A model generated the notes under the pieces. The model saw only the letters and a list, made by a program, of their open reading frames with translations. It was not told where the DNA came from and did not search any database. A DNA stretch of 64,000 nt from Saccostrea echinata (lineage: Eukaryota): NCBI RefSeq assembly GCF_033153115.1, contig NW_026889759.1:3100001-3164000 (forward strand). Direction: 5' to 3'. Positions 34,988-58,352 of the stretch are shown here, in pieces. A program made the translations under genes and the position numbers. Numbering within the stretch: position 1 is the first letter of the stretch; each line of letters begins with the position of its first letter.

Positions 34988-37900
34988 ATGAATGTAGTAC
35001 ATATTAAAACCAGTGATAAAAATATTGAGCAAGTTGATGATTGCAATTCAATGAATTGTGACAACAGTCCCAGTAAAGAACCTGGAGTCTCGCTGCCTTG
35101 TCCCCCTCTAAAACCTGAGGATACAGACTGTTGTGGGTCAGGATGTGTACCTTGTGTGTTTGATATCTATGAACAGGATTTAAAAATATGGAGAAAAGAA
35201 TGCAGAAAAATAAAAGAAAACCAGAGAAATGAAGAAAATCTGGTAATTTAATATATGTAAATTCTACAATGTTGATAAAGAAGACAGTAAACCTGTGTAG
35301 CAATTGGCAAACATTTTAACAAAAAAATATTTATTTAAACCCTAAGATAAAGAGAGTTTTGTTCAGTAATGGAAATAATCAGTGTTAGGTTGATGTGTTT
35401 TTTTTTTAAATTTCAGTCTGATGATCATTTGCTGACTGATTCTGAGTATAGGAAGTTTTGTATCACAGAAATCAGACAAGAAACAAAAAATTGTTTTCGC
35501 TTTCGACTGAAATTGCCAGAATTTTCATCCTTGGGCCTCAAAGTTGGACAGCATATCATAATTAGGTAATAATAATTTTCACTTTCATCTTCGAAAAAAA
35601 AAAATATTTGGTTGATAATAGATACATATATACATGTATCTGAGTATAAGTTCATTACATGAAGGAAACAAAAACTAATTTTGTTTCATATTGAATAATA
35701 TTGATTTAATAGTGATTTGTTCATTGTTAAAAAACAATATATATAACAATACTTGTTATCATTTATTTGGACACTGATGTTTATATTCTAGGGATACAAA
35801 CAATGGTTCAGCAGTTAGTCGACAGTATACCCCTATATCTGATGTCAGTTGTTTGGGACATTTTGATCTCCTCATCAAGGTAACATTTTACAGTGCTAGT
35901 TTTACAAGATACATAGTTACCTCCCTTTCAAAAATTTTAAAATAAGGATTTGGTTTATTCTTTTACATGTATTTATTTATGTGATTGAATTTAAGACAAT
36001 GATCAGAGTGTGCGAAAAATGACTATCTCAAGAAAATTTTTATTATTGGTAAATAATTCATGCTGCATTTCATTAGCATTTTATGTAAACAAAGATTTTT
36101 TTAATATTATCAAAATACTTTGAATGACTTAATGGGACACAAACTGCACTGGCATATTTAGGGTGGGGGCTCAATATGTAGTGATGAATAAATTCTATTT
36201 TCTTGTTAGATATTGCTTTTATTTACATAAAACATAGCTAAAATAACTCAAAAATGTTTTTAAAAGACTTAAAACCTTGTAGCTTCTTGGGGCCTCAATA
36301 GACCCTCATCAAAGCTTTACCCTGGACCCACTGGGGGCCCTAAGGTGACCCTAGGCCTGCTCCTACCCTCTCCCCTTTCCCCCCATCCTTTCAAGAATCC
36401 TGGATTCACCACCAAAATAGGTGAAATAAAATAAATAAAAAACTTTTAATTTGTCTTGCATGAAATCATTTTAGATTCTATTCATTACAAAATTCATTTT
36501 TGATCTTTTCATGTTCACCTGTCATTTGGATCCTATAGAGTTGTTAATGTCCTTTTATCAGAATTTTAAATTTTATCATTATTAGGATTACCTTAATTTT
36601 GCCTAAGAGAGAAGCAAACACTTTGTGTGCCAAGGATTTTCTTTTTAAAAATATGTGTATATATACACAGCTATGGATGGTATTTAGTAAAACACATGTA
36701 TTATCAATTCAGAAATTGCAATTCTTCTGTTATTTCCTGTGTCATTATTTTATATAGAACTATAATTGATGGGTTCTGGAGATTACTGGTATCCTTTCCT
36801 AGGGACCGAAATATATAGCCTTGAGCATTGTGACGTCATATACATGTATATCATTGTTTACACTATGGTGTCATAGTTTCAACTGAAGAAACGTGCCTAA
36901 ATTTGTTGGAAATAGCTTGTTTTAGAGGTCATGTGTAAAAATATGTTGCAGAATAAAAAAATACATGATAACTGTCTTGCAATATAAGCAATATTTGTGC
37001 TCAGGTCGAAAACATGAAAGAGAGCTCAGCAAGTGCTGCCCTCTATCATGTTTTCTCACCCTCGCCCAAATATCACTTATATTTCAAGACAGTTATCATG
37101 TATTTTATATTTCTCAGTCAATGCATAAAAAAGGAACATTTAGTTGATTGTTGTTTTTGAGCTTGACTGAAGTAAAAAAAAAAAAAAAACTATCCTTCAG
37201 ATGCTGTAAGTTAATGGAAAAAATACTTCTAGTCTTTACTTGTTATTTATTCAAACTCAGATTTATGACCATGGGAAAATGAGTCACTGTGTCAGACAGT
37301 GGAGTGTTGGTATGGGTATTGAAGTCAGAGGGCCATTTGGAAATCTTCAGTATTCTCCTAACAAGGTAATAATTTTTAAGATATTTTTGGGTGTTTGCTG
37401 ACAAGGAGATAATGTAAGCCTGAGGTTTTGGTAATAGAAAGTGCAGTATGCACCAATTAAACTCTGCAAAATTTATTGTATTTTCATGTGCTAATGTTTG
37501 AATCTGTTTACATTGATATACAGTCTTACTCCATGTTTGTTTAAACTGTTCATTGTAAGATAAGTACCCACTGAAAGTCCAGGTTATCTGGGGATTTGTA
37601 ATAATTCTGCTGCTACATGAAAGACATGTTCCTTAAGGTTAATATCATCACTTTGTTTACTTGATAAAATTTTGCTTTAACACTTATGATTTGTTCAAAA
37701 GAAATTCTAATTTATAATTAAAATGGACATAATTTCAGCATACCTTGCAGGACAAAATCTGAAGAAATGCCTAACTTGATATTTTTATAAACGAATAATA
37801 GGCATTTAGCTGTGAGAGTTATCTCTCTTATCAGAGGGTCAATGAACCTTAAAGTTTATATATATAATATGAAACTAGGAGAATCAGTCTTTATTCTAAG

Positions 37901-49049: not shown

Positions 49050-52000
49050 CTATTGCTGCTCCATTTCATGTGGTTGTCCAAAACATCGTCCAAAACATCG
49101 GCGCAGTATACGACGCAAGAAATTCGGCTGAAAAAATAGGAGTATAACATTGAGTATTTAAAAATTGAAATGAAGTATAAAAAACACCACTGGCATCAAG
49201 TTAAAATGTGTGTTACCTTTTTGGGGGCTGCTTTGCGGGCTTCTGGCACATCTGCAGCGTCACAGAAAGCTATGAGCAGATCCTTATCTACGAGCTTTTT
49301 AGTCTATAAATGATAGAAATGTACAGAACAGAAAACGTTTCGTAAATATTTAAAAAAAAAAATAAAATGAATCAATTAGGATCTTTTACTTTAGGTAATG
49401 TAGTTGTACGAAAAATCGCTGTGTACAGATATCATTGAGTAATTAGCTTTTTCTCATTTTTTTTTTAAAGAAATTACGTGTTATTTTAATTTTTATTATT
49501 TAACAACGTTTATCAAAGATTTATTGTGAGCAACCTTCAATTATATACATTGAAGGAAAAAACAAACAAACAAACAACCTTCTCATCTAGATATCTCAAA
49601 CAAACAAATGTACGTGTACTGTATACATACATGTAAAACAACATGGACCAACAAACAACCAAAACAAAAAGGAAATTTTCAGAATTAACAAAATGGTCCC
49701 ACTATGATAAATAATAAAGAAAATAAACATCTTTTTAAAAAAATGCTCATTGATAATTAACTTTCTATTTTATATATTGAATACTTACTGACAATTAATC
49801 TTTAATCTTTAATGTGTTAGTCCAAAAAAAAAAGTCAAGTTTTCATACGCATCCTTGATTTCATAAAATACACATTTGTATTTTATTTCCGCCATAAAAC
49901 CAAATTATTTCTTAACAGGAATCTTACTTATTTTTATTCTTCTTAGCATCATGACATCATAATTAGCTATAATATACATGTACATGTAATTATGGGAATA
50001 TTTGCCCATTTTATCGCCTTTGAACAAATCGTCTCAGATTGCAGCGGGAAGGTTAAACTGATTATTGTAACAATTCACATAACATATAAATTTCCGTCCA
50101 CAACAGAAACATGTATATCGGAGTATAACGTTTTTAATTGATGCTTCATTTGTTGGTCCATATCTCAATACTATGATTGAAAAGGTAATTTAAAGAATTA
50201 TTAGTACTGGTGTTTAATGAAACCACGCTCTATCTGATAGATAAATATAAGGGCGGATCCAGGAATATTTCTATAGAGGAAAGGCCCATGTTATGTCAGC
50301 TAAATCTCTGCAAAGTAGAGACATATTAGTATCAAAATAAATTTGGTTAAAAAAAGAGAAATATATAACATTTTAATCTTACAGCACTGAATCTTCAAGG
50401 GGTGGGGGTCCAGACCTCTCTGAACCCCACCCCAACGTTGGATCCGCCTATGTAATGTATATGAATAAAAATGCTTACCTTCAGAATTCACATACTATAG
50501 AAATTCACTTTAAAGAACCACATGGAATGGTTACATCAAATGCATATAAAATATCTACTAAAACAAGGTAAACCGTGATCCTGCTCATTGAAAACATATA
50601 TACTAAAACATAATATAATTAAGAAACATATGCAGATAAATTATAGTATATCATAATATCAGTGAGTCTTATTTTTATATTATTTTTGGAAAATCTCAAG
50701 TAATTTTAATTTATCGAATAAAAAAACATGTAAGGGACACCATTTGTTCCAGTGATACGTACCAGGCTATTTACAGCAATCTCTGTGATGGTATCATCGA
50801 GACATAAACCGGTGAAGGTATCCTGCAAAATTGTATTTATAAGATTAATACAACTGTTTTCAAGTTTGAAATATAGTTTGATTCTCTCTCTTTCTCTCTC
50901 TCTCATCTGAAACATCATGATGATTTGACATTTTTTTGTTTAAAATGATAAAAGATATCCATACATCATGTCCGATGTATCGATGGCGAAAGTAGGACCA
51001 GTGAAGAGGCACTTCCGGTAATTCAGGTGGTGTGTAGCCCTGAGTACTGGTGGACGGTTGATCCTCGTCCTGGAAGACAACATACACACATTACCGACAT
51101 CAGTTAGTTTGATTCTACTTATCTAAATATTATGCAATTTGATGATAATTGAAGCTCTTTACAAATGACTGAAATTTTCAAAACTATTACTATTGATGTT
51201 TATTTTTTTTTATTTCGGTTGTTATATTTAGAGGTTGCATTGTTTCAAAAAGCAGTTGAGAGTAAGTACTACATTTTTACACGTAAATTTAATTTGGCAG
51301 CTGTTCAGTCAGCTTCCGATTTGAACAGGCTGACACTTGAATATACACTACCTGAGGATGCTTCTATATAAATATGACTAATAAAGTCTTTGCTGTTCTT
51401 GAGAAGAACATTTTAGATTTAAAGATTTCCCCTTTATATTAGCCGGTTTAAATATTGCTCTACGATCAGCTAAAACAGTCTAGTGATGTACGAAAGATGA
51501 TCCAGATGAAATGAGATATAATTAATACCCTAGCGTATCTCAGAGGCCCTTGACCCTTGTAACCTTTCAGTTACATGTTAGACCAGAGGATAGTCAATTT
51601 ACATCATAAATTTAGTTCAATGGTGAACTCTTAATATGTAGACTAATAAAGATCTTACCGATTCTGGTTCATCGTAAACACCCATGCTCCATGCAAATCT
51701 TGAAACAAGCTGCCTTCGTGGCGAGATGAAATACTGAAAGTATAAATAAAGTACTTGTTTGTACGTATGATTTTAAAAACATGCATAACAAATACTCTGA
51801 AAAATATTTTTAAAATATCTTCTGGTAGCCCAGAAGTACTCCTTGCTCTCGTTGTAAAAAAAAGCACTTGGCTTACTTGTTTATATGCATTACCCGGGGA
51901 AAGTGAAGACTTTCAAAGAAATAAAGCATTTTTACTATGTAATCAATAGACCCCCCCCCCACACACACACACAACAGAACACAAGACCGAGTGGTCATGA

Positions 52001-54948
52001 AATTTGCAATTTTGGACGACGAACACTTGCTAATCATTACCATGCACTTTGTTAGTTTGCTGAATACCAGGGATAGAGAAGTAGATTTTCAAAGAAATAT
52101 ATATTATTATTCATTTTCACTATTATACATGTATATTCAACAGAGCCCCACCCTAACGACCGAACCCTGGCTCGGGCCATGAAATTCATAATATTGGAAG
52201 GCATTCTTGCTCATCATAACTATGCACTTAGTTTGTTTGCTTAATATCCTGGAGCATAGAAGAAGATTTTCAAAGAAATAATCCATTAACAGTGCGACAT
52301 TTAACTCCGGACACGACATAGTCCGGACTTTTTACTACCATTTCTAATTGCGATATCAAAGAAACTTTAATATTTCTTGGTGGGATTTTTTAGCAGTATC
52401 ACATAATCTCATGCTGAATTCACAAGCTTATCTATTTTCAAAAATATAAAGTCCTAAATATCAGAATCCCATGGAAGAATGGTGGGATTTTTTGTCCCAA
52501 GTACTATCCCACCATTCTCCCATGGGAGAAAAAATCTCAGATGGGATATTTTCTCCCACAAAATTGTACAAATGGGATAAATCCCACGGATACTGATCAG
52601 TGGGATATTTTCTCCCACACACTGCCAAACATAGGATTTATCCCATATATTCTGCTGTGTGGGACATTTTCTCCCACCAGTACTTGAATGTGGGACAAAG
52701 TCTTAAATCTTCATAATGACTAACAGCAAATGTCATTAAAGTATTTATATAAAAATACCCCAGAGCATACTCTCATAACATCCACTGACAAAATAGGGCC
52801 TAGCTGTTGAACATAAAGAGAGCAGGTTGATTTTCTTGAAACCTGTTATCAGAGTAGACTAGCAATAGGAAGAACATGAATGAACTGGTTTTTAACAAAC
52901 AAACCAAAGACAAAAAATATACTAGCACCAGGAGCAAGCAGATGTAAGAGTATGAATTTGTAATTTTAATTCATGTCAAAGTCTTTTCTTTTCTGTGCTC
53001 TATTTTAGGGTCAATAATAACATACAATTGGACTAAAGGAAAATGTAACTATTTCCTCTTTGTTCCACACAGCATTGTACTTTTCAAGGTTGTCATTCTA
53101 CATCGTAATCCTAGATCTAGTATTTTTTGGCAAGTTAGAATCTTTGTGTTTGTGATCAAATCTTAATTTACCGAGCTAGTCTACATTTTTATTTTCTATA
53201 CTCCGAGTACATTTACCCCTTCATCGTAAATGCCTATGTATTTAATCAAACCACAGCTCTGTTCTTTTTTCACTTTATAATCAATAGACCCCCCCCCCGG
53301 GGGGGTTACCAAAAAACGCCTGACCCTCGGGTCATAAAATTCCAAATTTTAGAACAGACATCCTTGCTCATCATCACAATAGTGAATACACTTATTTTAT
53401 CTGCTCAAGGGGGGGGGGGGGAAGAAGATTTTAAAGAATTTATGCACTTTCACTATGTGATCAATAGAGTTCGACCCTAACTCCAGAACCCCTGACCATC
53501 AATTTCAAATTTTTTGCAAAGGACTCATCGCTTGTTATAATTAATAGTTTGACTGCTTGATGTCCGGGAGCAAAGAATTAAGTTTTAAAAGATTGCATTA
53601 ATTTTGATAGTTTTAGCCCCATCCCTCAAGCCCGAGCGGGGCGGGGACCATGAAATTCAGTATATTTTGTTGTTATAAGCCAAAATTGGCTGAAATTGGT
53701 TAAGTGGTTCCTGAGAAGAAGTTGAAAATTTTCAAAAGTTTACGACCAATACACGGCATACAACATCGGACAAAAACGGATAGCGATAGGTCCCCACATT
53801 GACTCAAGTGACCTAAAAGTATAACTTCTTCTAACATGATAGACAGACAAGACATGACAGACAAAATACACTGAATCGTTGCATCCCAACTAATAAGACT
53901 TCGAAAGTTCTCTGAATTTGCTTATTGCATATTTTGTAGTTTGAAGAATCGCTCCAAAATTTTGAATCGAATTTAGAAATCTGACACTTGTTTGCGGTCC
54001 CATCACGATCAAACTTGAAATTATATGTACTAGTCTACAATTGACCGAATTTCCCTTTTGGTTGAAAACTGTTCAGCGTACTTGGATGAAAAGAGACAAT
54101 AAATAGACGACAGGATTAAAGACAAACTTTATTGTTGAATTATAGTGTGATGTAAACAAAATAGACATTTTTTCGTGATACATTTATAACGGAGAGTCTA
54201 ATATCTGAATATTATAGCAATTCTTTTTAAAATAATAAGATCAAAAAGTGTATTTTTTACCGTTATATTTACCTATATCTATATACATGTATTTCCATAA
54301 ACATAAATCATACTCACGTGTTCGATCTCCTCTCTGGTATAATCGAATCTTGGTTCGTAAAAATTTACATCCAAGGCTGCCTATTAAGGAAAAAAATCAG
54401 ATACCGTTTAAGGAGTCTGTGACACATGAAAAAGCATCATGTAACAAGTATGGTGGGAGTACTTTCTCATATATACAAAGTGTCGGATATTGAGTTTTAT
54501 TTGAAAATATAGTCGCGTAATTTAACTCATACAAACCAGTAAACGACAGAAGTAATAAGGGTGTGCCACTGGAACAGGGCAAGTTTTTTTTCCCCCAGTT
54601 CAGAATTTATGATTCGATGAGTGAGGTTATCGATAATATGTTTACAAATGCTTACAAAGTTTTGATAAAAGCCATCAAATTTAATCCAGCTGCTGTAGTT
54701 ATTTAGATAAATGTACAACATCGAGAGGAAACTTTAATTTAAAACAAAACATAAGAGATTTAATATGAAGGCCTTCATGGAGGAAACACACACCCTAGAA
54801 AAGGGGTACACATAGGTCATATTCAGCATGATTACATCTCGGTTATATCTATGCTAATATTAACACTTTTTTAATATTTTGTACAAATACTTACTAATGG
54901 ATATCTATCCTCATTGATAGTAATACCCGGATTAACTCTCCTTGCCAT
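49050..54948 (-). CDS. Uncharacterised ~213-aa protein encoded by 11 small exons; no family recognised
   Basis: Exons 54948-54895, 54568-54533, 54380-54318, 51733-51659, 51069-50965, 50822-50763, 50494-50479, 49966-49928, 49418-49390, 49303-49217, 49127-49050. All introns are GT-AG and the phases chain into one stop-free frame from ATG to TAG. Several donors are strong (GTAAGT, GTGAGT, GTAAGA, GTAAGC). Confidence 0.72.
52440..52705. repeat. Degenerate tandem units of about 57 bp with TGGGATATTTTCTCCCAC / GGATAAATCCCA mini-palindromes, probably inside a DNA transposon
   Basis: TGGGA(T/C)ATTTTCTCCCAC near 52542, 52601 and 52660, alternating with TGGGATAAATCCCA-like motifs. Confidence 0.6.
53240..53820 (-). 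mobile_element. HINE-type remnant (related pieces at 51870-52290)
   Basis: Units with CCATGAAATT, TCTTGCTCATCAT and GAAGAAGATTTT, and end GAGAAGAAGTTGAAAA..AAAAGTTTACGAC...GACTCAAGTGACCTAAAA. Confidence 0.55.
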
Positions 54949-55029
54949 CCTTCTCTTCTTTTCAGAGAAAAAATAAGGAGGGTTTCAAGAAGTAATCAAA
55001 ATATAATCAGCTTCTCGATGATGAGATAA

Positions 55030-55120
55030 CTATTATGACGTCACTATAGCGACAGCTCACTCGGAACACCTCGGAGCCAGTAAAACGAAGAACTGGGCAT
55101 AGGGGATTTATTTTCCGGAT
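55030..55120. promoter_or_regulatory. Candidate promoter of the small-exon gene
   Basis: Perfect CRE palindrome TGACGTCA at 55036-55043 and ETS-like TTCCGG near 55113, about 90-170 bp upstream of ATG 54948. Confidence 0.4.
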
Positions 55121-56840
55121 TGTTAAAGGTAAAATAAATTAAGAAAATTTTGAATCTACTTTAAATACACTTAAATATGTGCTTCAATAAAGCTTCTGAC
55201 ATTTTCAGGCAAGAAATACAATGTTTAAAAAAAAATCGATAACAAAATTTTCAAGTTTCTGGTGTGCATGGTAAGTTAATTATGGCAGAGACATTGTTAT
55301 TTTGTTTTGTTATTCTCTGCTCATGGTGATAAAAACATTCCTTTCCCTCATGTTTTACAACTTTTCTTTGCCTGTTTAAAGTGTATATAACATGGTATTT
55401 GGCACTCATGAAACACGTGATATTTTAAAAACTAGTCTTATACGATCCGATGAACACTTGGATGCAATATAGATCTATTGAAACTTAACGTAATCTATGA
55501 AAATGGACGGCTAAGTAAAACTATACATATACCAACATAGAGCATTTTCTGGTACATGTTATAATTGTATTTGACAATTATTTTAACAATGTGATCTATT
55601 CCTTTCTAAAATATCGTATTAATGTGCTTTTTTCGAGATGAAAATGTCAAGTTTGTTCAGGGTAAATATGTTGGGAATACCGTATTCTTCCAAACTTTTC
55701 ATCTTACTTCTAAAGATTTTTTTGTCAAAAATTTTATGTTCTGTCTGTTTTGGGGTGTGTGAAAATGGTCTTTTCTGATTGGGCAGACAAATTTAATTAC
55801 ATGCATACATATGAAGCATATTTATAGCAACTTTCAGTTAACCTTCTTCAGTTGACTTCCATATATGGAAATCGTCCAGACCTGTTAAACATAGAGTTAG
55901 ATTAACACTATTTTTCTATCCTATCATTTATTTTGATTACTCAGATATATATATACCTGCTACAGTCTGCATCTCTGACTCTTTGTTGTAATGTAAGTAC
56001 AAATATTACACCAACACTAAAAATCCATAGTATTGAGGGATTTATAACTTACATTACTTTGTCACTTTGATTTACTCTGATTTTGTATACAATATGACGT
56101 AAGAAAGTCAAAGTCTCTATTCTTAGCAATATTTTGAACTCATTTTGCAATACAGAAAGATGCTTCTTTTGGCAGCTGGATCAGGTATTATTGCTCCCAT
56201 GAGTCAAATTATTCAATGCATTCTGGGAAATGAAGAGGATGATACATTGAAACAGCACTTCTTGGCCTGTAAATCATAAGAGGTAATTCATATGAAGTCT
56301 GAACTGAATGAATGGTCATCTTTCTGGAACATTTCGGTCACCTATGCATTATAAGTCAGATAGTTAGAACTTTGTCTTTTATCTAGTTTTTTGACCACAT
56401 TTTAAAACTTTCAATTATTTTGTTACAAGTGAAAGTTTAGGAGTCAAGTTCACTGTAAGATTGTTAACTTTTGACCCTGCATTAATCCAACTTGCACTGG
56501 TAGTGTTTGTAGGACTGTATATTACTTTTAATAGGGTAATGTTATCTATAATTTCTAGATATAAACATACAAAATTAGAATTCCTTAGCCAGTCACTTGT
56601 TTAAATAACTGTATGTTCTAAATGAAAAAAAAAGAGAAAAAAAAACCTTCCTTGAATTATTTATTGAAAATGCATACAGTCAGATATCATTATAATGCAA
56701 TAAGACCTTTTCTATATATTTGAAAGACAACCAGGAAATACATCCTGAGTTTGTTGCTGCATGTGACCTGTACTTTCCACATGAGAAATAATGTATTTTG
56801 TTGAGTTTTCCAATTAGAAAACATTCATTGACATAATATT

Positions 56841-57931
56841 TTTAGCTCACCTGAGCTGAAGGCTCAAGTGAGCTTTTCCGGTCGAAGGGTGTTCATGTCT
56901 GTCGTGTGTCGTCTTTCAACTGTCGTCTGTAAACTTCTACCATTTTCGACTTCTTCTCAAGAACCACCAGGCCACTTTCAACCAAAGTTGCTAGAAAACA
57001 TCCTTGGATGAAAAGCATCCTTCAAATGAAGGGCCAAGCCCTCTTCCAAGGGGTAATACTCAGTAATAAAGAATTCGTGAAAATTTAATGGCATCTTTTA
57101 AAAATCTTCTTCTCAAGAACAAATATGCCATTAAAGATTACATAGTGTAAATTCAAATTTATTCCGGGACTAGGATGGAGCTACAAGGGGCGATCAAAGT
57201 TTTACATAGGATTATTATAGGGAAAAATCTTTATAAAAATATTCTCAAGAACAGGAAGCCCATGATTAGTCATATTTATATGGAAGCATCCTCAGGTAGA
57301 TAAGTGTAGATTAAAGTTTGTTCAAATCATGTTCCCTGGGGCTAGGGTGGGGCCACGATGTGTGATCAAAGTTTTACATAGGAATATACAGGAAAAATCT
57401 TTAAAGAACAGCAAATCCATGATTAGTCATATTAATACAAAGGCATCCTCGGATAGTGTAGATTCAAATTCAAATCCTGACCCCTGGGAGTGAAGAGGGG
57501 ACACAACAGGGGATCAAAGTTATATATATAAGAATATATAGGAATAGTCTTTAAAAATCTTCTCAAGAACTGCAAAGCCATGATTAGTCATAATAATACA
57601 GAAGCGTCCTCAGGTAGTTTAGATTCAAGTTTGTTCAAATCATGACCCCCCCCCCCCCCTTTCCCAACCCGGAGGTATGGCGGGGCCACAACAGAAGATC
57701 AAACTTTTACATAAAAATAGGTAGAATTTTATTTTTTAAAAAATCTTCTAAAGCCATGATTAAACAAAGTGGAAACATCCTTCATGTGTAGATTAAAGAT
57801 TGTTCAAATCACGACCTCCTGGGAAATAGGATTGAACCACTTTATATTTAAACTTTTCAATAATGAACTGATTTCTGCTTTTCTCCAGCCAAAGTGTTCA
57901 GGTGAGCGATGTGTCCTATTGGCTTCTTGTT
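56841..57931 (+). mobile_element. Complete HINE with ~170-bp satellite-like units, same subfamily as 39564-41432
   Basis: 5' TTTAGCTCACCTGAGCTGAAGGCTCAAGTGAGC and 3' TCAGGTGAGCGATGTG..CTTCTTGTT. It shares the distinctive tail TTTATATTTAAACTTTTCAATA.TGAACTGATTTCTGCTTTT. Confidence 0.85.
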
Positions 57932-58352
57932 CAATATATTAGAAGCGTGATTAATCAGAAATTTTGACCCCTCTTACAATTTCTAATGTAATATGATAGT
58001 ACATGTACAATAAAAACTTGACACATGAAGATAAACATGCAGGAAGAATTAATAACCATGCTTTACAACACCAGGTTGCTAGTGGTATGGATTGTTTATC
58101 TAGAACTTCGACAGAGAATTTCCATTCATCCATTACTGGATACATGTATTGCACAATCTTCAAGCATATTGCTTGCATTCTCAATTCAAATCAAAGACAT
58201 GAAGATTGTTCTCTGATATAAAGGTTATATTTCTTATCAAGCATTGTATTTAATGCTGTAATATTGTAATTTAGGAGACATTAAATGGGAGGACTACCAA
58301 ACATACAAATATGGAGACAAACTCTATGAGGGAAGAATGGATTTGGCTTTAA

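What the first reader, a model, noticed from the sequence alone, without database searches (positions are those of the whole stretch)
49050..54948. Hidden orphan gene built from 11 small, mostly symmetric exons
Exon sizes are 54, 36, 63, 75, 105, 60, 16, 39, 29, 87 and 78 nt. Eight of ten introns are phase 0, and seven of nine internal exons are multiples of 3, so most could be skipped in frame. Protein: MARRVNPGITINEDRYPL-WHTLITSVVYWF-AALDVNFYEPRFDYTREEIEH-YFISPRRQLVSRFAWSMGVYDEPES-DEDQPSTSTQGYTPPELPEVPLHWSYFRHRYIGHD-DTFTGLCLDDTITEIAVNSL-YVNSE-ANYDVMMLRRIKI-TIFRTTTLPK-TKKLVDKDLLIAFCDAADVPEARKAAPKK-PNFLRRILRRCFGRCFGQPHEMEQQ. I recognise no domain. The layout recalls schistosome micro-exon genes that diversify by exon skipping, but there is no signal peptide. 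A further candidate phase-0 exon (53911-53870, RTFEVLLVGMQRFS) has weaker splice signals. The gene lies between CYB5RL and its partial duplicate, a rearranged interval.
Basis: partly seen in the sequence, partly recalled or inferred. Interest (0 to 1): 0.8.

Follow-up and report, generated by a model that had tools for sequence, protein, structure and literature searches.

The report
Annotated rock-oyster orphan gene, seven exons
This is a real, transcribed gene of the rock oyster Saccostrea echinata, already in RefSeq as an uncharacterised 173-residue protein found only in Saccostrea, but it has seven coding exons rather than eleven and does not fit the schistosome micro-exon genes.

Summary
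Only seven are real. Spliced RNA contigs from 4 runs in 2 studies join E1 to E3, E3 to E4, E4 to E5, E5 to E6, E6 to E10 and E10 to E11. An exon-5 peptide search returned a database protein of 173 aa that equals exactly E1+E3+E4+E5+E6+E10+E11. It is XP_061175669.1, "uncharacterized protein LOC133184600 [Saccostrea echinata]". So the gene is not hidden.

The four smallest exons (36, 16, 39 and 29 nt) and the extra candidate have no shown RNA joint and no counterpart in homologues. Such cassettes are common by chance.

The orphan reading holds. The only relatives found are three S. cucullata proteins. There is no Pfam or PDB match and no confident fold. All six coding introns are phase 0, and two S. 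cucullata paralogues differ from the full-length form exactly at exon borders.

The micro-exon-gene analogy fails: the real exons are 54-105 nt and there is no signal peptide.

My best guess at function, with low confidence, is a disordered cytosolic protein held at membranes by a conserved basic, cysteine-bearing C-terminal helix. Retention of the E6-E10 intron removes that helix.

The parts
54895..55025 (-). Exon 1: 5'UTR (RNA contigs reach at least about 55025) plus the first 54 coding nt (ATG at 54948; coding part 54948-54895)
   Evidence: X2 record 8 covers 54894-54999 and has 26 more letters beyond the laid stretch; joint 54895|54380 in all four runs; residues 1-18 of P0001.
54318..54380 (-).
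   Evidence: joints 54895|54380 and 54318|51733 in all four runs.
51659..51733 (-).
   Evidence: joints in all four runs; 19/25 residues identical to P0004.
50965..51069 (-).
   Evidence: joints in all four runs; 100% match to residues 65-99 of P0001; indels among homologues concentrate here.
50763..50822 (-).
   Evidence: joints 50763|49303 (X3), 50763|50507 (X2), 50763|50447 (X2, X3), and read-through contigs.
49217..49303 (-).
   Evidence: joints 50763|49303 (X3) and 49217|49127 (X1).
49026..49127 (-).
   Evidence: X1 record 1 covers 49026-49127; invariant K147 K148 P149 N150 R153 R154 L156 C159 F160 G161 C163.
49304..50762 (-). 1459-nt intron between E6 and E10. It is retained or alternatively processed in part of the RNA. 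Alternative acceptors at 50507 (immediate TGA) and 50447 (22-residue tail). Read-through adds 18 residues, then a stop.
   Evidence: X1 record 1 is continuous over 49217-50821; also X2 records 5-7, X5 record 20 and the joints table. Searches give the translations. The other introns have zero depth, so this is not DNA contamination.
54533..54568 (-).
   Evidence: zero depth in bin 54400-54599 in all runs, and E1 joins E3 directly; no homologue has an insertion at this border; the chance level is high.
50479..50494 (-). The acceptor seen in RNA is 13 nt upstream (50507), and contigs read through the proposed donor.
   Evidence: joint 50507|50763; X2 record 6 is continuous over 50419-50508.
49928..49966 (-).
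   Evidence: covered only by continuous contigs (49826-50448), with no joint at its borders among those shown. One search gives the G+C.
49390..49418 (-).
   Evidence: tables 3 and 4: place 49419 C>T plus a 2-nt insertion.
53870..53911 (-).
   Evidence: zero depth in bin 53800-53999 in all four runs.
55036..55043 (.). CRE-type palindrome TGACGTCA about 10-20 nt upstream of the most 5' RNA evidence; a possible promoter element (lead only)
   Evidence: 3 copies in the window against 0.41 expected.

Best explanation
The interval holds LOC133184600 of Saccostrea echinata, a single-copy gene on the minus strand that is transcribed and spliced. It has seven coding exons (54, 63, 75, 105, 60, 87 and 78 nt), six phase-0 GT-AG introns, and a 173-residue product, XP_061175669.1. 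The protein belongs to a small, fast-evolving family seen so far only in the genus Saccostrea: one copy here and three in S. cucullata. It has no known domain, no signal peptide, no membrane span and no confident predicted fold. The steps above are shown, and the confidence figure refers to them. The following steps are inferred, at about 30% for the function as a whole. The protein is a largely disordered cytosolic protein. Its acidic Ser/Thr cluster at the E4-E5 border (DEPES-DEDQPSTS) is a likely kinase target. Its most conserved feature, the C-terminal basic amphipathic helix with two invariant cysteines (KKPNF-RR-L-..-CFG-C), holds it at the inner face of membranes through charge and probably S-acylation. 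RNA forms that retain the 1.46-kb E6-E10 intron, or use acceptors inside it, stop soon after E6 and would give a protein without that tail.
For: verified the exon coordinates, phases and splice sites. In one search spliced contigs from 4 runs in 2 studies gave joints E1-E3, E3-E4, E4-E5 and E5-E6 in all four runs, E6-E10 in X3 and E10-E11 in X1. All joints are CT..AC on the + strand. The other introns have zero depth, so the material is RNA rather than DNA. In some searches the exon-5 peptide found P0001 (173 aa), which is colinear with exactly these seven exons. One search gave its RefSeq name and accession, in a cluster of one member. Searches found homologues only in S. cucullata (E 2e-48 to 1e-26 with the single sequence; 4 proteins with the profile); the family profile hits exactly the seven exons in the own 923-Mb genome and nothing else. 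Searches show a single copy; no Pfam match; no PDB match (best E 0.18); pLDDT of 38, 0.37 and 0.45; the highest 19-residue hydropathy is 0.81, so there is no span or signal core; the C-terminal 35 residues carry net charge +6; and the top amphipathic 14-mers of all four proteins lie in the tail; the invariant columns are concentrated in the tail, including C159 and C163; the read-through and alternative-acceptor forms end 0-22 codons after E6.
Against: The function is inferred from sequence features alone; nothing here shows localisation, acylation or phosphorylation. The basic tail could equally be a calmodulin-binding or nuclear-targeting segment. Orphan status rests on a word-indexed search, plus one exhaustive search made only with the least conserved exon, so distant relatives in other bivalves may have been missed. 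Contig depths cannot rank isoforms, and 11 joints were not shown, so rare forms that use the small exons are not excluded. No dN/dS could be computed because the coding DNA of the S. cucullata relatives was not available.
Confidence: 0.85

Rival explanations
1. One reading: an 11-exon gene resembling schistosome micro-exon genes, which diversifies its product by skipping small symmetric exons.
For: All 11 segments are open and flanked by AG..GT. The real exons are all symmetric, and S. cucullata paralogues lack exactly E3 (P0005) or everything before E5 (P0006), so exon-sized modules do vary within the family. Eleven joints were not shown.
Against: No shown joint uses E2, E7, E8 or E9. E2 and the extra exon have zero RNA depth. 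The E9 acceptor is destroyed in one allele. No homologue has residues at those positions. RefSeq holds one protein form only. Chance supplies 177 such cassettes. There is no signal peptide. The real exons of 54-105 nt are far above the typical 15-nt micro-exons (10.1101/2023.06.21.545858).
Confidence: 0.04
2. The family is not a true orphan. It is a diverged member of a wider bivalve or metazoan family that these searches were too insensitive to link.
For: Identity is only 53-59% even between congeners, so divergence is fast enough to hide older relatives. The homologue search depends on shared 5-residue words and a length window. The one exhaustive search used only the 35-residue exon 5, the most variable part.
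Against: The profile search scored 7318 candidates and found only Saccostrea proteins at E<=1. There are no Pfam, PDB or Atlas leads.
Confidence: 0.25
3. The conserved basic C-terminal helix is not a membrane anchor. It is instead a calmodulin-binding site (bulky hydrophobic residues at positions 1, 5, 10 and 14 of F-L-R-R-I-L-R-R-C-F-G-R-C-F) or a nuclear-targeting basic cluster.
For: The spacing of F152, I156, F161 and F165 and the net charge of +6 fit a basic amphipathic helix of the calmodulin-target type (read). The clusters RK..KK..RR..RR resemble a bipartite basic signal.
Against: The invariant cysteines (C159, C163), and the extra Cys run in S. cucullata (CFGCCC), are not explained by either alternative.
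Confidence: 0.2
4. The transcript is a non-coding or recently arisen RNA, and the 173-codon frame is not translated.
For: There is no domain, no confident fold, restricted taxonomy, and frequent intron retention with premature stops.
Against: The frame is kept across seven exons and is conserved as protein in three S. cucullata genes, with block-wise conservation and only in-frame differences (E 2e-48). No difference from the reference is listed in the coding exons in any of the four runs (two unlisted ones in X1's 49026-49127 piece, near the contig's end, are not located), while the retained intron shows several substitutions and indels.
Confidence: 0.05

Closest known systems
RefSeq model XP_061175669.1 / LOC133184600 (Saccostrea echinata), 'uncharacterized protein'
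   Same: Identical. The 173-aa product equals the seven RNA-supported exons of this interval.
   Different: Nothing differs.
Saccostrea cucullata LOC134273543 (186 aa), LOC134233771 (151 aa), LOC134281950 (114 aa)
   Same: They share the family: a conserved N-terminus, the YFISPRR..SRFA block, RYIG, NSL, DL..AF.DA..VP and the basic Cys tail.
   Different: Identity is only 53-59%. There are three copies there against one here. One copy lacks exactly the E3 module and one starts at the E5 border. The S. cucullata tails carry more cysteines.
Schistosome micro-exon genes (MEGs)
   Same: Symmetric exons separated by much longer introns, a lineage-restricted and fast-evolving product, and no known domain.
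   Different: MEGs have 10-20 exons of 6-81 bp, mostly 15 bp, a conserved N-terminal signal peptide and secreted products (10.1101/2023.06.21.545858). Here there are seven exons of 54-105 nt, no signal peptide, and no exon skipping among the joints shown.
Peripheral membrane proteins held by a polybasic stretch plus S-acylated cysteines (for example GAP-43/BASP1-type or paralemmin-type anchors; from general knowledge)
   Same: Disordered, acidic body; a short basic amphipathic segment with conserved cysteines and no membrane span.
   Different: No sequence homology was found. The motif is C-terminal and is not a CaaX box. Acylation is untested.

Membership tests
Schistosome micro-exon genes (MEG) | Most of the coding sequence is built from 10-20 very short exons (6-81 bp, mostly about 15 bp) | tested here: not met
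   The supported coding exons are 54, 63, 75, 105, 60, 87 and 78 nt. The 16-39 nt exons are unsupported.
Schistosome micro-exon genes (MEG) | Symmetric exons (lengths are multiples of 3, same intron phase on both sides) | tested here: met
   All six coding introns are phase 0, and all five internal exons are multiples of 3 (restricted to the supported exons).
Schistosome micro-exon genes (MEG) | N-terminal signal peptide and a secreted product | tested here: not met
   The N-terminus, MARRVNPGITINEDRYPL, is charged. The highest 19-residue hydropathy anywhere is 0.81.
Schistosome micro-exon genes (MEG) | Protein variants made by skipping symmetric exons | tested here: inconclusive
   No skipping of a supported exon appears among the joints shown for 4 runs (11 joints were not shown and contigs drop rare forms). 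Between paralogues of S. cucullata, one lacks exactly the E3 module.
Schistosome micro-exon genes (MEG) | Sequence relationship to, or taxonomic range of, Schistosomatidae families | tested here: not met
   Only Saccostrea proteins were found.
Taxonomically restricted ('orphan') protein-coding gene | No detectable homologue outside a narrow lineage and no known domain | tested here: met
   The sensitivity limits are stated in the report, so a deeper relationship is not excluded.
Taxonomically restricted ('orphan') protein-coding gene | Evidence that it is expressed and that the frame is maintained | tested here: met
   Spliced RNA contigs in 2 studies, and protein-level conservation in three congeneric genes. 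Translation itself cannot be tested here.
S-acylated polybasic membrane anchors | Cysteines next to a basic amphipathic segment, conserved across relatives | tested here: met
   C159 and C163 are invariant, the flanking K/R are invariant, and the tail has the highest hydrophobic moment in all four proteins.
S-acylated polybasic membrane anchors | Demonstrated acylation and membrane localisation | not testable with these tools
   This needs acyl-exchange chemistry and imaging of a tagged protein.

The most novel reading that the evidence does not exclude
A Saccostrea-specific, exon-modular disordered protein. Its phase-0 exons are gained or lost as whole cassettes between paralogues. Its conserved membrane-anchoring tail is switched on or off between samples by regulated retention of one 1.46-kb intron: sample S2 mostly shows the E6-E10 splice, while sample S1 mostly shows retention or internal acceptors.
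Probability: 0.2. Interest if true: 0.35.

Novelty: already known. Interest (0 to 1): 0.15.

Why it matters
The result corrects the finding. The gene is not hidden, because automatic annotation already has the right seven-exon model. The 'micro-exon' aspect came from threading chance AG..GT open segments through AT-rich introns, so this is a useful calibration for reading exons by eye. What remains is an ordinary case of a common class: a genus-restricted, fast-evolving, disordered protein. It has three mildly interesting traits: all introns are phase 0, paralogues differ exactly at exon borders, and a conserved basic Cys tail is dropped by intron retention. It could serve as a small case study of how young genes evolve in oysters. 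It does not open a long-standing question.

Tried and rejected
I stopped that step and checked the exons by coordinates instead.
Searches were made exon by exon. All full-length work used P0001, the database protein that the exon-5 search returned.
3. Pfam gave nothing on six single exons or on P0001. A call that included the 18-residue exon 1 was rejected for length.
4. The PDB profile search gave a best E of 0.18, which is noise.
5. AlphaFold2 on the 4-sequence alignment gave pLDDT 38 with no residue above 50. I made no fold search because matches to such a model are meaningless.
6. Two ESM Atlas look-ups gave no usable hit.
7. P0002 and P0003 are tandem-repeat proteins that match 14-15 residues of low complexity. 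I rejected them as relatives.
9. The third homologue search, on residues 1-64, returned only the query.
10. I considered that the alternative acceptor at 50447 comes from a transposable element. The own-genome DNA search found only the locus itself, and there are no terminal inverted repeats. The idea is not supported.
11. I tried to locate the C-terminal exons of the neighbouring cyb5-reductase-like gene, to see whether this gene is nested in one of its introns. A motif scan and tBLASTn with a paralogue's last exon found nothing convincing. This is unresolved.


Full report
**Observation**

They have the stated sizes and AG..GT borders, and they form one open chain of 642 nt. Eight of the ten introns of that model are phase 0.

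**RNA evidence**

One 6000-base stretch (49000-54999) was used to find runs. It was then laid against four of them, from three samples and two studies. The runs are stored as contigs and labelled 'RNA?'. They carry clean joints with CT..AC ends on the + strand, which is GT..AG on the minus strand. Most intron bins have zero depth, so this is spliced RNA and not DNA.

- All four runs join 54895|54380, 54318|51733, 51659|51069 and 50965|50822. These are E1 directly to E3, then E3-E4, E4-E5 and E5-E6.
- X1 joins 49217|49127 (E10-E11).
- X3 joins 50763|49303, which is E6 directly to E10.

Downstream of E6 the picture is mixed:

- **Canonical splice.** The E6-E10 joint, seen in X3.
- **Acceptor at 50507.** The first codon after it is TGA (read).
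- **Acceptor at 50447.** It gives a 22-residue tail before a stop.
- **Read-through.** Contigs run on unspliced from E6. One 1975-nt contig in X1 is spliced at every other intron yet continuous from 50821 to 49217. Read-through adds 18 residues and then a stop.

None of the joints shown uses the borders of E7, E8 or E9. In X1 the AG acceptor of E9 reads AA (place 49419). Two caveats apply. The tool withheld 11 lesser joints. Contigs also cannot rank isoforms or show rare ones.

**Identity**

No single exon has a Pfam match. Exons 5 and 10 each occur once in the 923-Mb genome of the window.

An exhaustive HMMER search with the 35-residue exon 5 returned P0001, a 173-aa protein identical over residues 65-99. 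Its sequence is colinear with E1+E3+E4+E5+E6+E10+E11 and contains nothing from E2 or E7-E9. It is XP_061175669.1, 'uncharacterized protein LOC133184600 [Saccostrea echinata]', and is the only member of its 90% cluster.

The window is therefore from the black-lip rock oyster. The gene is already annotated with exactly the structure the RNA supports, and no second protein isoform is on record. All later full-length searches used this database protein.

**Why the four small exons are not real**

- They have no shown joint and no RNA depth apart from read-through contigs.
- They have no counterpart in any homologue. The alignment has no insertion at the E1/E3 or E6/E10 borders.
- E7-E9 have intron-like G+C of 0.23-0.31, against 0.37-0.52 for the supported exons.
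- Chance explains them easily. The six real introns contain 177 in-frame, stop-free AG..GT segments of 12-120 nt. Nineteen of these have a pyrimidine tract and a GTR donor, and E2 is one of two such segments in its intron.
- The family profile, run over the whole genome, hits exactly the seven supported exons and nothing else.

**Relatives**

A single-sequence search and a profile search of the 5.8-billion-protein collection found only three further proteins, all from Saccostrea cucullata:

| Protein | Length | Identity to P0001, search / alignment | Source |
|---|---|---|---|
| P0004 | 186 aa | 53% / 59% | |
| P0005 | 151 aa | 44% / 55% | |
| P0006 | 114 aa | 48% / 53% | |

The search figure is the best local BLASTP alignment; the alignment figure is identity over aligned columns in A2.

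The profile search scored 7318 candidates and found nothing outside the genus at E<=1. A third search, with residues 1-64, found only the query. In S. echinata the gene is single copy.

There is no Pfam family and no PDB relative (best E 0.18). The ESM Atlas gave no lead. AlphaFold2 with the four-sequence alignment gave mean pLDDT 38 with no residue above 50, so I made no fold search.

Orphan status is therefore supported, with stated limits. The large search depends on shared 5-residue words and a length window. My one exhaustive search had to be spent on the least conserved exon.

**Architecture**

All six coding introns are phase 0, and all five internal exons are multiples of three. If about half of animal introns are phase 0 (general knowledge), six out of six has a chance near 1-2%.

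The modules show up in the family. P0005 lacks exactly residues 19-39, which is E3. P0006 begins at the E5 border.

Conservation is blockwise:

| Exon(s) | Identity to P0004 |
|---|---|
| E1, E3, E4 | 72-76% |
| E5 | 46%, and it absorbs nearly all indels |
| E6, E10, E11 | 41-56% |

The exons with lower identity (E5, E6, E10, E11) still contain the invariant motifs RYIG, NSL, DL..AF.DA..VP and KKPN..RR.L..CFG.C.

**How it probably works**

The following is shown:

- There is no signal peptide or membrane span. The highest 19-residue hydropathy is 0.81.
- The body is acidic (pI 5.4), with a DEPES-DEDQPSTS cluster.
- The last 35 residues carry net charge +6.
- The strongest amphipathic 14-mers of all four proteins lie in this tail.
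- Cys159 and Cys163 are invariant, and the S. cucullata proteins add a CCC run.

From these I infer a disordered cytosolic protein, possibly regulated by phosphorylation. I infer that it is held at membranes by a basic amphipathic helix reinforced by S-acylation. The RNA forms that retain the E6-E10 intron, or splice into it, would encode a protein without the anchor.

I put about 30% on this function. A calmodulin-binding or nuclear-targeting role for the same tail is the main alternative.

The depths hint that the canonical splice dominates in sample S2 and the truncating forms in sample S1. Contig depths are not a measure of expression, so this is only a lead.

**Surroundings**

On the + strand there is a cytochrome-b5-reductase-like gene, with FAD_binding_6 exons at 35796-35885 and 37210-37353 and a NAD_binding_1 exon at 39134-39322.

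A partial copy of the NAD-binding exon lies at 56166-56351. It is 92% identical in DNA, with a one-codon insertion and an in-frame stop. More diverged, roughly colinear pieces follow it up to 57937.

I could not find the last exons of that gene. Whether LOC133184600 is nested in one of its introns stays open.

A TGACGTCA palindrome sits at 55036-55043, just upstream of the most 5' RNA evidence.

**Comparison with known systems**

Schistosome micro-exon genes have 10-20 exons of 6-81 bp, mostly 15 bp. They have a conserved signal peptide and secreted products, and are specific to Schistosomatidae (10.1101/2023.06.21.545858). Only the symmetry of the exons is shared here. Exon size, signal peptide and taxon are not met, and exon skipping is not shown. 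The gene is best filed as a taxonomically restricted gene of rock oysters that RefSeq already lists.

Two public S. echinata RNA studies fit the years of the coded runs: PMC6201952 (2018) and PMC12564202 (2025, visceral ganglia and gonads). The link is not shown. Neither paper's main text mentions this locus.

**Verdict**

The gene is real, ordinary and already annotated. Interest is low.

Noticed in passing
window 56166-57937 (+), compared with 39134-41438: A partial duplicate of the cyb5-reductase-like gene. The NAD-binding exon is copied at 92% DNA identity, with a one-codon insertion and an in-frame TAA. Diverged copies of the downstream intron follow it. One further piece (41820-41903 against 56742-56825) is out of order, which suggests rearrangement.
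   Followed up: partly
window 39323-64000 (+): The exons for the C-terminal third of the NAD-binding domain of the cyb5-reductase-like gene were not found. It is open whether that gene ends before 49 kb or spans LOC133184600, which would then be nested in an intron.
   Followed up: partly
window 40427-41193 and 57217-57683: Tandem arrays of repeats of about 160 nt, present in both the parent and the duplicated segment at 60-80% identity.
   Followed up: no
window 46498-46686: A 21-nt minisatellite (CTGACAAGTCGACATAATTAT-like units).
   Followed up: no
window 51200-51400, 52200-52400, 53400-53800 (introns of the gene): Short stretches with summed contig depths of hundreds to tens of thousands in all RNA runs, with many loose ends and odd joints. 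These are expressed interspersed repeats sitting in introns 3 and 4, not part of the gene.
   Followed up: no
window 36831-36838, 40213-40220, 55036-55043: Three perfect CRE palindromes (TGACGTCA) against 0.41 expected. One lies just upstream of the 5' end of LOC133184600, and two lie in the cyb5-reductase-like gene.
   Followed up: no
window 49826-50448 (minus strand): In runs X2 and X5, RNA coverage inside the E6-E10 intron stops near 49826, next to a T-run and about 55 nt past an AATAAA at 49887-49882. In X1 it continues to E10. This could be an alternative 3' end or simply an assembly break.
   Followed up: no
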